Source: Botryllus schlosseri (Eukaryota). Taken from it: 64,000 nucleotides of DNA. The stretch lies in assembly GCA_051294905.1 (NCBI GenBank), contig CM119376.1:14322001-14386000 (forward strand). Direction: 5' to 3'. The notes beneath the pieces are model-generated. The model was given only the letters and a program-made list of their open reading frames with translations. It searched no databases and was not told the origin of the DNA. Of the stretch, positions 55,601-61,600 are shown one piece after another. The position numbers and the translations under genes are program-made. The stretch's first letter is position 1. Every line of letters begins with the position of its first letter.

Positions 55601-58600
55601 TCCGAATTATAGAAAATCAAACTTGCCAATAAACTAGAACGGGGTAATTTGGGGTGGTGGTTTCAAGATCCTGATTCTGTACGTGACTCTTAATTATATA
55701 CATGATAATCAATTCGTATTAGATAGATTTGTAACAGCAATACAAAAGTACTCGGCCATTATTTGCCATATTCCTCTGATGCGACAAGTCATTAATAGGG
55801 CGATTTTTTGACCGAAAAAACTGAAGAATTTGACCAAAAAATCAAAATTTTGATATTTTTTGACTTTAAGAAACTTAATTCTGATCAAATTTTGGACTAA
55901 CGTATGCAAATTAGGTGTTTTCCTACATAACGTTGGAATTGTAATACTTATCTTCATTCCTGGTTGGAACTGTCTGTCCTTACGAAGTAGTCTGGCCTGA
56001 AAAAATTTTTTGACTCTAAAACTGACAAATGTTTACATGAAAAAAGCTTTATTTTAACGAAATTTGGCTCAATGAAGAATTCCAGTAGTTACATCACGTA
56101 TTATGTTAGAAATAATTAAAATTTGTTGTACGAAGTAGTTTGGCCTGAAAAAACTTTTTTGACTCTAAAACTGACAAACTTTTACATGAAAAAAAAACTA
56201 TATTTTAACGAAATTTGGCCCTATGAAGAATTCCAGTAGTTACATCACGTATTATGGTAAAAATATTTAAAATTTGTTGTAGTACAACGAAAGATACTTT
56301 CCTACATTTTCGGGTAGAAAGTGTCTGTCCTTACTAAGTAGCTTGTCAAGAATGGAGAAAGAACGTTCAACAGCAGCAGTTGTAGGCTGACAACACTGAA
56401 GTTGTGCGTACACTCCTGGTGACACGCCATGTTGCTTCAGAAGTACACAAAGAGACGCTTAGGAGTACAGAACTTCATGACACATTTGAATAAAATATTC
56501 ATTTTATTCCCGAAGCTTTTCGGCTGACCCTCGTCGGGGGAATATCGTCAGCAATAATGCGAGGATTCGAATAACTATGTTCAGCAACAATATATATCGC
56601 TAATTATGACGTCACACAGAAAATATACAAAGTTAGGAAAACGAGAGAACTGAAGCGTTGGCATGGAGATAGCGAAGCAAAACAAGTTAATGCGCGATTT
56701 TCAAATGATACACAAATTCTTTCTGTTGGCATAGACTAGGTTTGCTCATAGTGATGATGGTGGACTCAAGAACAGACAAATGAAATAAATTGCGACCCTT
56801 AGCCAATATAGAGAACATGTCCTCGTGATAGTTAGCAGCACACGTATGATTTTCTAGTAAATGTTTGCCTATAGAAGATTTTTGACCCATGGCCTGGTTA
56901 TGTTCAAGAACAAGCGGATTGTTAAGCTGCGAATTTGAGATATAAGATTTGACAGATGGTGGAATGTGTTCTTTGATACGGTCCTGTAACCGTTTGGAAG
57001 TTCTCCCTACGTACCGACAATCGCAGTGGCACTTGAATTCATAAATTACGTTGCTTTGTTTTATAGCCGGGAGAACGTCCTTTCGGGTTGCTGGAAACAT
57101 TGGTATCGTGGTAAAAACAACATTGGTTTTCACCGCTGGATAACAGCGGTAGACTGCTGAAGTTATCTGTGTCTCAAATCGATAAGAAACCGGGCCAATC
57201 CAAGGAAGATGAATGTACACATCCCTATTTTCACGAGAAATTACTTCGGGGGTTTCTTCTGGTTTGGTATCATTCCAATGACTTAACTTTTTAGTTATTG
57301 TCCGCTTAATAACATACTCTGGGTATCCGTTGTCAATGAAAATTTTACGGATGTAGTCAAGTTCATTATTCAATTTGACCTCGGAACAAATCATCAACGC
57401 CCGGTGAACCAAGGTGCCGATTAAATTGATTTTACGACTTTTTGGGCTGAAAGAGCTCCATCGAAGGTAATGACCCGAAAATGTGGGCTTCCTATAAACG
57501 GAGGTAAGGAATTTTCCATCCCGTTTCTCCACAAGAACGTCAAGGAATGCCAGGCGATTGTTAATTTCTTTTTCCGACGTGAATTGCAATGCTGGATGTA
57601 GTTTGTTTAAATTTCCCAGGAAAGTATCACAGTCAGATTCATTATCGAATATCACGAACGTGTCATCGACATAGCGATGGTATGATAAGGGCGGTTTAAT
57701 AGAAGAAGAGAAGAGCTTATCTTCATGAAATCCTACAAATATATTGGCTAGAATAGGACCCAATGGTGATCCCATTGCTACACCATCAGATTGTCGGAAC
57801 ATGATATTGTTGAAACTAAATTCAACAGAACACACAGCGTTTCTCATCAATTCCATGAAGGTAGCTCTCGAGAAAGGAGGGGGTATTAGCTTACCGTTAT
57901 ATAGAGCATCAGCGCAAATATTCAACGTCTCATTTAGTGGTACGTTGGTGAAAAGGCTCTTTATGTCGAATGAGCCTAGGAAATTATCGCGCGCGGATAG
58001 CTGTGAGCGACGCATCTCATCAGCGAAGGTAAAAGAATCGCGTACGCAATGCGACCCGTAAAGTTCGCGAACAGGTTCCAGTATGTTGATCAACCACTTC
58101 GCCAACTTCTGTTGCATTGACCCAGTCATGCTGAGTATCGGTCTGAGTGGCACATCGTCTTTATGCGTCTTCGGTAATCCATACATACGCGGTCTTTGGG
58201 AGCCAACAGGCCTGATGGAGTCATATTCGTCAGTGGATATTACGTCATCGTTTTTCAAGATTCGAAGGCGTCGTTGTAGTCGTCTTTCAGACTTTGCAGT
58301 ATTGTCGTATTCCGAGACCGGGCCAAGTACAACGAATTTGGATTTATCCTCGAGAATAGTCATCATCTTTGCAATGTAATCTTTCTTGTTTAAAATTACC
58401 ACGCCGGTACCTTTATCTGGTTTCGTTATGTGAATATCGGGGTTGCTTCGCAGAGATTTAATGGCACGGAAGCATTCCTTTGTCATCAAGAAATCCGCTT
58501 TGTCAACTGGACATCCACAATACGAATGTGCCAAGTCCGTAAGTCTTGCTTTGAAAGCTGGCACTTCATCGATTGATTTTGCTTCACGGTGCTTCAATTG

Positions 58601-61600
58601 AGCTAATAGAATCTCAAATTCGGCGAAAACCTCCTCACTCTTGACATTAATTGGTGGAATACAGAAATTTAACCCATGCGATAGAGCAAACTTTTCGTTC
58701 GAGGACAGTGCGTAGTCCGATAAGTTGATGATGTTCTTCTCATCGGGACAAGCGACACTTCCGAAGCGGTCAATGACTAGCCGGTTCAAATTTCGTTCGT
58801 TTTTACATAAATTAATATCCTCTTTGATTACGTCAATTGATGCGAGGTATCGGCAAAATCGAACTAGGTCAAAGAATGATAAGAATCGCGCTACCTGTCT
58901 TTGCTGAGTGCGGCAGTCACGACGAAGTTTCAATACCATAGATTCTTTCTTCCCGATTTCATCAAATAAAAACGCGCGCTCCATGTTGGGATTGAGGCGG
59001 GCACGAGACTTTTCTATCCTTGCTCTCAAGAATGCAGGCAACGTCTTCTTAGCGATACAAGCCTTCAAAAAGGCTATTGTTGATAACGTAGTTCTCAAAC
59101 GCCCGCGAGTCTTTATCAGCGTATTAATGATGTTTCGTGCCATTAAATCTCTGCGAAGCAACCCCGATATTCACATAACGAAACCAGATAAAGGTACCGG
59201 CGTGGTAATTTTAAACAAGAAAGATTACATTGCAAAGATGATGACTATTCTCGAGGATAAATCCAAATTCGTTGTACTTGGCCCGGTCTCGGAATACGAC
59301 AATACTGCAAAGTCTGAAAGACGACTACAACGACGCCTTCGAATCTTGAAAAACGATGACGTAATATCCACTGACGAATATGACTCCATCAGGCCTGTTG
59401 GCTCCCAAAGACCGCGTATGTATGGATTACCGAAGACGCATAAAGACGATGTGCCACTCAGACCGATACTCAGCATGACTGGGTCAATGCAACAGAAGTT
59501 GGCGAAGTGGTTGATCAACATACTGGAACCTGTTCGCGAACTTTACGGGTCGCATTGCGTACGCGATTCTTTTACCTTCGCTGATGAGATGCGTCGCTCA
59601 CAGCTATCCGCGCGCGATAATTTCCTAGGCTCATTCGACATAAAGAGCCTTTTCACCAACGTACCACTAAATGAGACGTTGAATATTTGCGCTGATGCTC
59701 TATATAACGGTAAGCTAATACCCCCTCCTTTCTCGAGAGCTACCTTCATGGAATTGATGAGAAACGCTGTGTGTTCTGTTGAATTTAGTTTCAACAATAT
59801 CATGTTCCGACAATCTGATGGTGTAGCAATGGGATCACCATTGGGTCCTATTCTAGCCAATATATTTGTAGGATTTCATGAAGATAAGCTCTTCTCTTCT
59901 TCTATTAAACCGCCCTTATCATACCATCGCTATGTCGATGACACGTTCGTGATATTCGATAATGAATCTGACTGTGATACTTTCCTGGGAAATTTAAACA
60001 AACTACATCCAGCATTGCAATTCACGTCGGAAAAAGAAATTAACAATCGCCTGGCATTCCTTGACGTTCTTGTGGAGAAACGGGATGGAAAATTCCTTAC
60101 CTCCGTTTATAGGAAGCCCACATTTTCGGGTCATTACCTTCGATGGAGCTCTTTCAGCCCAAAAAGTCGTAAAATCAATTTAATCGGCACCTTGGTTCAC
60201 CGGGCGTTGATGATTTGTTCCGAGGTCAAATTGAATAATGAACTTGACTACATCCGTAAAATTTTCATTGACAACGGATACCCAGAGTATGTTATTAAGC
60301 GGACAATAACTAAAAAGTTAAGTCATTGGAATGATACCAAACCAGAAGAAACCCCCGAAGTAATTTCTCGTGAAAATAGGGATGTGTACATTCATCTTCC
60401 TTGGATTGGCCCGGTTTCTTATCGATTTGAGACACAGATAACTTCAGCAGTCTACCGCTGTTATCCAGCGGTGAAAACCAATGTTGTTTTTACCACGATA
60501 CCAATGTTTCCTGCAACCCGAAAGGACGTTCTCCCGGCTATAAAACAAAGCAACGTAATTTATGAATTCAAGTGCCACTGCGATTGTCGGTACGTAGGGA
60601 GAACTTCCAAACGGTTACATGACCGTATCAAAGAACACATTCCACCATCTGTCAAATCTTATATCTCAAATTCGCAGCTTAACAATCCGCTTGTTCTTGA
60701 ACATAACCAGGCCATGGGTCAAAAATCTTCTATAGGCAAACATTTACTAGAAAATCATACGTGTGCTGCTAACTATCACGAGGACATGTTCTCTATATTG
60801 GCTAAGGGTCGCAATTTATTTCATTTGTCTGTTCTTGAGTCCACCATCATCACTATGAGCAAACCTAGTCTATGCCAACAGAAAGAATTTGTGTATCATT
60901 TGAAAATCGCGCATTAACTTGTTTTGCTTCGCTATCTCCATGCCAACGCTTCAGTTCTCTCGTTTTCCTAACTTTGTATATTTTCTGTGTGACGTCATAA
61001 TTAGCGATATATATTGTTGCTGAACATAGTTATTCGAATCCTCGCATTATTGCTGACGATATTCCCCCGACGAGGGTCAGCCGAAAAGCTTCGGGAATAA
61101 AATGAATATTTTATTCAAATGTGTCATGAAGTTCTGTACTCCTAAGCGTCTCTTTGTGTACTTCCGGCAAAGGTACAGCGATCTGCAATTAAACATGTTG
61201 CTTCATTCTGACAATGATGTCTATTACATCACGATTTTTCGTCATGCGCTTCTTGATATCAGAACCATGCAATGTCCACACAGTATTGCTTCAGTTAGGA
61301 TACGTTAAGCATAACACTATCGTATGTTAACATTCAATAATAACACCACGTCAACCTATTTGTTTCATTCGAATGTTTATAATTCACAATGAGCAGACCA
61401 AGGGACCGTCTACAACGGTAGGCCTCTAAAGTAGGCTACAAGCTGTAAAATGTCAAATGATAAGTTTACCGACAGTACAAAATCTGCGATACAAACGAAA
61501 TTCAGGTTGCAAAATAATATTGATTTTGTTAATAATTTCGACATTTTTTGACCTAACACTACAATTTTGACATAATTTTGACTTATTTTGACGTGTCAAA

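What the first reader, a model, noticed from the sequence alone, without database searches (positions are those of the whole stretch)
56428..61205. Palindromic Penelope insertion is one event with the exact signature of twin priming on a tandem RNA
Seen: (1) a single 12-bp TSD, CATGTTGCTTCA, flanks both arms; (2) both outer ends are element 3' ends beyond the hammerhead; (3) the plus arm has 29 extra nt and ends in AAACAT (61191-96, the CAT shared with the TSD), and the minus arm begins with the same AAACAT (59135-59130); (4) the inner junction has near-microhomology (ATGTTT versus ATGCTTC). Un-inverting gives one continuous template: truncated unit, hammerhead, full ORF, hammerhead. Known: L1 5' inversions arise by twin priming, and PLEs often occur as direct or inverted partial tandems. 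Inference: this is base-resolved evidence that inverted PLE structures form by twin priming on a multimeric or circular RNA. The two arm differences I saw favour a tandem genomic donor over a single circle.
Basis: partly seen in the sequence, partly recalled or inferred. Interest (0 to 1): 0.85.

Follow-up and report, generated by a model that had tools for sequence, protein, structure and literature searches.

The report
Head-to-head Penelope retrotransposon insertion, one event
This is one young insertion of a Penelope-like retrotransposon made of two copies lying head-to-head, the usual layout for this family; its ends fit a "both DNA ends primed on one tandem RNA" model neatly, but no other copy checked shows that fit.

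Summary
A 12-bp duplication, CATGTTGCTTCA, at 56428-39 and 61194-205 brackets two inverted arms of a Penelope-like element (PLE). The arms differ at 2 of 2029 shared bases. Both outer ends lie 3' of a minimal hammerhead motif, and the plus arm is 29 nt longer.

The genome holds direct tandems of a 2722-nt unit.

Among about 31 insertions of the family, 23 are head-to-head composites:
- Nearly all sit inside a single duplication of about 12 bp.
- Both outer ends fall in a 150-nt start zone at the beginning of the ORF.
- The two arms agree at 480 of 482 family-polymorphic sites.

So [quoted passage not shown] is well supported. It matches published in-vitro work (Frangieh 2024). That layout is the known PLE architecture.

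The special claim is not general. Only this copy has the inner end of one arm abutting the outer end of the other (1 of 23 composites; about 0.36 expected by chance). The five further insertions with the same extra-long tail also lack it.

The two arm differences are singletons and do not favour a tandem donor over a circle. No donor was found. Long reads could not be checked.

The parts
56428..56439 (.). Left copy of the 12-bp target-site duplication, CATGTTGCTTCA.
   Evidence: Read directly. 12-14-nt shared words flank the other composites of the family.
56440..59135 (-). Minus arm: unit positions 2696 (outer end) to 1 (inner end), 2696 nt. It has no microhomology to the target at its outer end.
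   Evidence: It is 99.6% identical to a natural tandem unit on C2.
56687..59134 (-). [quoted passage not shown] It is open to the inner junction but lacks the first 22 codons of the 837-aa ORF seen in tandem copies.
   Evidence: Pfam RVT_1 at E=3e-9, and GIY-YIG at E=0.0024, which is below the cutoff. The full ORF in tandem context is shown.
56505..56544 (-). Minimal hammerhead motif of the minus arm (unit 2592-2631), with core U4->C.
   Evidence: Sequence; variant table; no Rfam hit.
59130..59141 (.). Inner head-to-head junction. The minus arm ends ...ATGTTT at 59135 and the plus arm starts CGTGCC at 59136 (unit 668). The join is blunt or has a weak near-homology.
   Evidence: Genome-wide, the only copy whose unit positions 4-19 are not preceded by the tandem tail.
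59136..61193 (+). Plus arm: unit positions 668 (inner end) to 2725 (outer end). A 3-nt CAT overlap with the duplication follows.
61060..61099 (+). Minimal hammerhead motif of the plus arm (TATTCCC CCGACGA GGGTCAGCC GAAA AGCTTC|GGGAATA). The cut is predicted after 61092.
   Evidence: Other copies read CTGACGA. No Rfam hit.
61126..61193 (+). Start of the element's ORF (ATG at 61126-28) carried at the outer end of the plus arm. The family's start sites of reverse transcription lie here.
   Evidence: One search gives the ORF start in tandem context. Outer ends of 23 composites are.
61165..61193 (+). The 29-nt tail present only on the plus arm (unit 2697-2725). It carries two private substitutions, unit 2700C and 2716T.
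   Evidence: All other tails read in the genome have A at 2716.
61194..61205 (.). Right copy of the target-site duplication, CATGTTGCTTCA.
   Evidence: A contig of run X1 spans 61154-61254 without differences.

Best explanation

The element's endonuclease made a cut staggered by 12 bp. Both exposed 3'-OH ends then primed reverse transcription in the element's start zone, which lies just downstream of the hammerhead in the first ~70 nt of the ORF. The template was more-than-unit-length RNA from one donor. The two cDNAs were joined head-to-head by end-joining with little or no homology.

Shown:
- one duplication around both arms;
- both outer ends in the start zone;
- the plus-arm tail is in register with the natural tandem junction;
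- the arms share the donor's private variants;
- the same architecture recurs in most family members.

Inferred (my odds about 0.5): both primers sat on one tandem RNA. On this reading the left-arm cDNA, starting at unit 2696, ran 2696 nt until it met the site (unit 2725 = position 3 of the next unit) where the right-arm cDNA had started. That would give the 3-6-nt overlap AAA(CAT), as in L1 twin priming.
For: - 12-bp duplication and arm limits.
- 23 of about 31 insertions are head-to-head composites, and 12-14-nt duplications flank the whole composite.
- Arms agree at 480 of 482 polymorphic sites, against 33% disagreement between insertions.
- Both arms here share four private variants in their overlap (907C, 1842C, 2149A, 2600C).
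- One long plus one short start site in 20 of 22 composites, P=5e-5.
- A complete ORF needs more than one unit.
- In vitro, a PLE protein cuts and extends both strands, starts internally at two adjacent sites that define the tail, and multi-copy mRNA is proposed as the template: PMC11167929.
- For the same-RNA reading: the adjacency has about 1-1.6% chance per insertion. The inner end at unit 1 is unique in the genome. The outer end at 2722-2730 is a rare class of 7.
Against: - The adjacency is seen in 1 of 23 composites and in 1 of the 7 insertions with an extra-long tail. The family gives no enrichment: 0.36 expected by chance, P about 0.3.
- Any other composite can be fitted only by allowing arbitrary gaps, so for them the same-RNA model is untestable.
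- Two RNAs from one donor would give the same arm identity.
- The palindrome is not confirmed by long reads.
- No donor with the copy's variants was found.
Confidence: 0.75

Rival explanations
1. The event is the same dual-primed insertion, but the two cDNAs were copied from two separate RNA molecules of the same donor, for example in a dimeric ribonucleoprotein. On this reading the abutting ends in this copy are a coincidence.
For: - There is no adjacency in the 22 other composites or in the five further extra-long-tail insertions.
- A PLE protein dimer is predicted in PMC11167929.
- The small arm of the C11 composite differs from its main arm at 4 of 173 nt, including one polymorphic site.
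- The start sites pair as long plus short, about 17-79 nt apart. That suggests two start modules held side by side rather than a unit apart.
Against: - The coincidence has about a 1-1.6% chance for this insertion.
- Both the outer end (2725) and the inner end (1) are rare or unique in the family, yet they coincide.
- Arms always match at polymorphic sites. That needs strict use of sister transcripts.
Confidence: 0.33
2. The template was a unit-length circular RNA, produced by hammerhead-cut and ligated transcript and copied by rolling-circle reverse transcription. The left-arm cDNA went once round the circle until it met the right-arm primer.
For: - Circular RNA templates for more-than-unit PLE copies were proposed by Cervera and de la Pena 2014 (PMC4209133).
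- Adjacency modulo one unit is equally expected on a circle.
- Arrays of up to about 5 units exist.
Against: - On a 2722-nt circle the right-arm cDNA, starting at 2725, would hit the left-arm primer at 2696 after 29 nt. Yet it runs 2058 nt.
- Both arms carry a U4-to-C change in the hammerhead core. By general knowledge of hammerhead mutagenesis, this should cripple the cleavage needed to make a circle.
- In vitro, ribozyme mutants insert normally and uncut RNA is the main substrate.
- No insertion end or RNA end maps to the cut site at 2624.
Confidence: 0.06
3. The palindrome is not a product of one retrotransposition. It could be two nested insertions, a later DNA-level inverted duplication, or an assembly artefact.
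For: Inverted repeats are prone to misassembly. The available reads are short contigs that cannot span the arms.
Against: - No duplication flanks either arm alone, and the 12-bp one brackets both.
- The same architecture occurs, with different inner junctions and a single duplication, at 22 other loci on many contigs.
- It is the published typical PLE layout (PMC8557442).
- The arms differ at two bases and in tail length. The right junction is bridged by a contig.
Confidence: 0.04

Closest known systems
Canonical EN+ Penelope-like elements (Penelope/Poseidon type), with pseudo-LTRs, tandem/inverted insertions and a one-sided 30-40-bp tail (Craig et al. 2021, PMC8557442; Frangieh et al. 2024, PMC11167929)
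   Same: - RT plus a C-terminal GIY-YIG in one ORF.
- Partial tandems, so that a complete ORF needs more than one unit.
- An inverted 5'-truncated copy at the 5' side.
- A tail on one end only, 29 nt here.
- A hammerhead motif in the pseudo-LTR next to the ORF start.
- Start sites of reverse transcription inside the first codons of the ORF, not homologous to the target.
   Different: - In this copy both start sites (2696 and 2725) lie about 36 nt downstream of the family's usual pair (about 2660 and 2687).
- The hammerhead core carries U4->C.
- The clade was not placed by a tree.
L1 5' inversions by twin priming (Ostertag and Kazazian 2001; from my own knowledge, paper not read here)
   Same: One event with one duplication. 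The second nicked strand primes on the same RNA upstream. The inner end of one segment abuts the outer end of the other, with a few nt of overlap, and the join shows little homology.
   Different: - In L1 the two segments are different parts of one RNA. Here they are the same sequence copied twice, which needs a repeated (tandem or circular) template or two RNAs.
- L1 primes on poly(A). Here both starts are internal and one has no homology to the target.
- The adjacency is the rule in L1 but a single case here.
Retrozymes and hammerhead circRNA elements (Cervera and de la Pena 2016, 2020; bioRxiv 10.64898/2026.07.22.740005)
   Same: A type-I hammerhead in each tandem unit, and a proposed more-than-unit or rolling-circle template.
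   Different: This element is autonomous. Its ends do not map to the ribozyme cut site, and its ribozyme core is mutated, so a circle is unlikely here.

Membership tests
Penelope-like element (EN+) | Reverse transcriptase domain in a single ORF | tested here: met
   Pfam RVT_1 at E=3e-9, 37 bits, above the cutoff.
Penelope-like element (EN+) | C-terminal GIY-YIG endonuclease | tested here: inconclusive
   Pfam GIY-YIG at E=0.0024, 18.6 bits, below the 22.6 cutoff. The motif VIYEFKC...CRYVGRT...R...EH is visible.
Penelope-like element (EN+) | Partial tandem organisation (pseudo-LTRs) with frequent inverted 5'-truncated copies and 5' truncation | tested here: met
   There are 19 exact tandem junctions. 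23 of about 31 insertions are inverted composites, with variable inner ends.
Penelope-like element (EN+) | One-sided tail extension of about 30-40 bp | tested here: met
   29 nt here. Outer ends pair as long plus short in 20 of 22 composites, with offsets of 17-79 nt.
Penelope-like element (EN+) | RT groups with PLE/telomerase RTs in a phylogeny | not tested
   No tree or homologue search was run.
Type-I (minimal, PLE-type) hammerhead ribozyme | Core CUGANGA ... GAAA ... UH cut site, helix I, and a short palindromic helix III | tested here: inconclusive
   Other copies have CUGACGA, GAAA, AAGCUU, a C cut nucleotide and a 7-bp helix I. This copy has CCGACGA in both arms. Helix II is only 2 bp, or pairs with an upstream box. 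Rfam gives no hit and folding is uninformative. Cleavage was not tested.
Twin priming (L1 sense) | One target-site duplication around an inverted plus a direct segment | tested here: met
Twin priming (L1 sense) | The outer end of the internally primed segment abuts the inner end of the other on the template, as a rule | tested here: not met
   Met in this copy (3-6-nt overlap). It fails in the 22 other composites and in the five further extra-long-tail insertions.
Twin priming (L1 sense) | Both cDNAs are copied from one RNA molecule | not testable with these tools
   Arms come from one donor lineage. One molecule cannot be told apart from sister transcripts.

The most novel reading that the evidence does not exclude
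Penelope-like elements build their puzzling tandem/inverted insertions by coordinated twin priming. On this reading, one (probably dimeric) particle holds a single more-than-unit RNA. Each strand of a 12-bp staggered cut starts at a different site of the start zone, one long and one short. Now and then one cDNA runs up to the other's start site, as in this copy. This would be the in-vivo counterpart of the in-vitro both-strand extension and would explain the one-sided tail.
Probability: 0.4. Interest if true: 0.65.

Novelty: new member of a known kind. Interest (0 to 1): 0.45.

Why it matters
How PLEs make their tandem/inverted insertions and one-sided tails is stated as undefined in the field (Craig 2021). 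In-vitro work in 2024 showed that both strands are cut and extended, but did not link this to inverted copies.

This family gives clean genomic support for that link:
- a single duplication of about 12 bp around both arms;
- arms always from one donor;
- the two arms start at different sites.

The window's copy is the neatest single example, but on its own it proves little.

Tried and rejected
- Rfam scans for a hammerhead found nothing, both at E<=1 on 7 kb and at E<=10 on 221 nt. MFE folding does not recover the ribozyme.
Nine of the 39 clusters and five extra-long-tail insertions could therefore be judged from coordinates only.
- Read laying returned only short contigs, so there is no long-read test of the palindrome. 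The 'skip' joints in X1 look like other copies of a high-copy flank repeat, not a clean empty allele.
- A search for a paralogous empty site in the held DNA found none.
- No donor was found. The hammerhead variant 2600C occurs only here and in one short composite on C11 (L053). The tail variant 2716T occurs nowhere else.
- A canonical RNA 5' end at unit 1 is rejected. No other copy starts there, and a contig of a run guessed (not confirmed) to be RNA reads through it.
- Nested double insertion is rejected, because neither arm has its own duplication.
- Pyatkov 2004 could not be read. Two searches found no paper that links PLEs with twin priming.
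Full report
**What is there**

The window carries CATGTTGCTTCA at 56428-56439 and again at 61194-61205. Between the two copies lie two inverted arms, 56440-58471 and 59133-61164.

A search of the window's own genome found dozens of copies at 94-100% identity. They include direct tandems in which query position 2696 is followed, after 26 nt, by position 1. 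I therefore took a natural tandem unit of 2722 nt from contig C2 as a ruler.

In unit coordinates:
- The minus arm (56440-59135) is 2696->1.
- The plus arm (59136-61193) is 668->2725, followed by CAT that is shared with the duplication.
- The 29 extra nt of the plus arm (61165-61193) are the last 26 nt of the unit plus AAA of the next unit.

The arms differ at two bases only, 57092/60512 and 56984/60620.

**What the element is**

The ORF has an RT domain (Pfam RVT_1, E=3e-9) and a weak C-terminal GIY-YIG match (E=0.0024, below the cutoff) with a visible motif.

In tandem context the ORF is 837 codons. It starts at an ATG at unit 2658 and crosses the unit junction. A complete gene therefore needs more than one unit, as is known for PLEs (PMC4209133). 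The minus arm here lacks the first 22 codons.

Rfam finds no hammerhead. The family nevertheless carries a minimal type-I motif at unit 2592-2631: helix I TATTCCC/GGGAATA, then CUGACGA, GAAA and the palindrome AAGCUU. In this insertion both arms read CCGACGA.

It occurs 19 times exactly in the genome, and 21 times allowing 2 mismatches. That part of the reading is right.

**The family**

I mapped 31 insertions.
- 23 are head-to-head composites.
- In 20 of the 21 other composites checked, a shared word of 11-14 nt (mode 12) flanks the whole composite. They are single events.
- Outer ends fall in three classes: short at 2589-2667, long at 2677-2703 (mode 2686-2689), and a rare extra-long class at 2722-2730. 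The extra-long class has 7 members genome-wide and includes this plus arm.
- In 20 of 22 other composites one arm starts at a long site and the other at a short site (binomial P=5e-5). This is the one-sided tail of the literature (PMC8557442).
- Inner junctions show 0-5 nt of overlap or 1-18 nt of filler.
- At 68 family-polymorphic sites the two arms of a composite agree in 480 of 482 comparisons. Arms of different insertions disagree at 33%. Both arms therefore always come from one donor lineage.
- Differences within composites are almost all singletons.

**The special claim**

Twin priming in the L1 sense predicts that the outer end of one arm abuts the inner end of the other on the template.
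- Here the plus arm ends at 2725 (= position 3 of the next unit) and the minus arm ends at position 1. That is an overlap of 3 nt, or 6 nt counting CAT.
- For 46 such gaps in 23 composites, only this one lies within +-6 nt. Shuffled pairings expect 0.36, and the chance for a single insertion is about 1-1.6%.
- The 16-mer at unit 4-19 occurs 20 times in the genome. Nineteen are in tandem context; the twentieth is here.
- L013, which carries one of the other six extra-long tails, was mapped and shows no adjacency. No copy holding unit 1-350 lies near the remaining five.

So the adjacency is real and rare, and it is not due to a preferred RNA end. But it is a single case.

My odds are about even that it records one cDNA running up to the other's start site on one tandem RNA. 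The main rival is two sister transcripts with a chance coincidence.

A unit circle fits poorly:
- The plus-arm cDNA would meet the minus-arm primer after 29 nt.
- The ribozyme core is mutated in both arms.
- Uncut RNA is the main substrate in vitro.

**Tandem donor versus circle**

The two arm differences are each unique among about 50 copies. They are as well explained by later mutation or copying error. No donor with this copy's variants is in the assembly. One other short composite (L053 on C11) shares the ribozyme variant, so that lineage moved at least twice.

**Literature**

Craig et al. 2021 describe exactly this architecture and call the mechanism undefined.

Frangieh et al. 2024 show in vitro that a PLE protein cuts and extends both strands. 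It starts internally at two adjacent sites that delimit the tail. They propose multi-copy mRNA as the template, but do not link this to inverted copies.

Two full-text searches found no paper joining PLEs and twin priming.

**Limits**

- Reads were available only as short contigs. The right junction is bridged in one run that may be the source sample. The palindrome itself is unverified, though 22 other loci show the same layout.
- The scan had already noted, on other DNA of this genome, PLE hammerheads with an upstream-paired helix II, and a 16-kb palindromic PLE concatemer inside one 12-bp duplication. My results agree with both.

Noticed in passing
family-wide (L006-L053; unit 2589-2730): In 20 of 22 composites, one arm starts at a 'long' site (about 2686-2689) and the other at a 'short' site (2647-2667). 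This gives P=5e-5 against independent choice. Six of eight single-arm insertions use the long site. The two strands of one event seem to use different start sites.
   Followed up: partly
family-wide, 68 polymorphic unit positions: The two arms of a composite agree at 480 of 482 polymorphic sites, while arms of different insertions disagree at 33%. Both cDNAs always come from one donor lineage.
   Followed up: yes
window 56536 (-) and 61068 (+); L053: A hammerhead core U4->C (unit 2600) is shared by both arms. It is found in only one other insertion genome-wide, C11:21249021. A lineage with a probably dead ribozyme still inserted at least twice.
   Followed up: partly
window 61168 and 61184 (unit 2700, 2716): The 26-nt tail of the plus arm carries two private substitutions. 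All 25 other tails read have A at 2716. This is a local excess next to the cDNA start (about 0.1 expected).
   Followed up: no
L038:1632-1636, L047:1584-1603, L024:1487-1501, L053:1101-1102: Four short inverted arms end at unit 2601-2605, inside the hammerhead core. Two of them have fillers that repeat GGCTGACCCTC. This looks like stalling and slippage of the RT at the ribozyme fold.
   Followed up: no
window 59141-59143 (-): The head-to-head join creates an in-frame ATG three codons before the truncated ORF of the minus arm. This gives a chimeric open frame of 818 codons.
   Followed up: no
window 55957-56352 and 56300-56466: The left flank holds repeats of about 150 bp (D1-D3, D6). Its word depth in read sets is about 10-50 times that of the element. 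The insertion sits in a very high-copy repeat.
   Followed up: partly
G000:C7:8982182-8996123: A palindromic concatemer of this family has 2 tandem junctions on the minus strand and 5 on the plus strand. The scan had already noted it as bounded by one 12-bp duplication.
   Followed up: no
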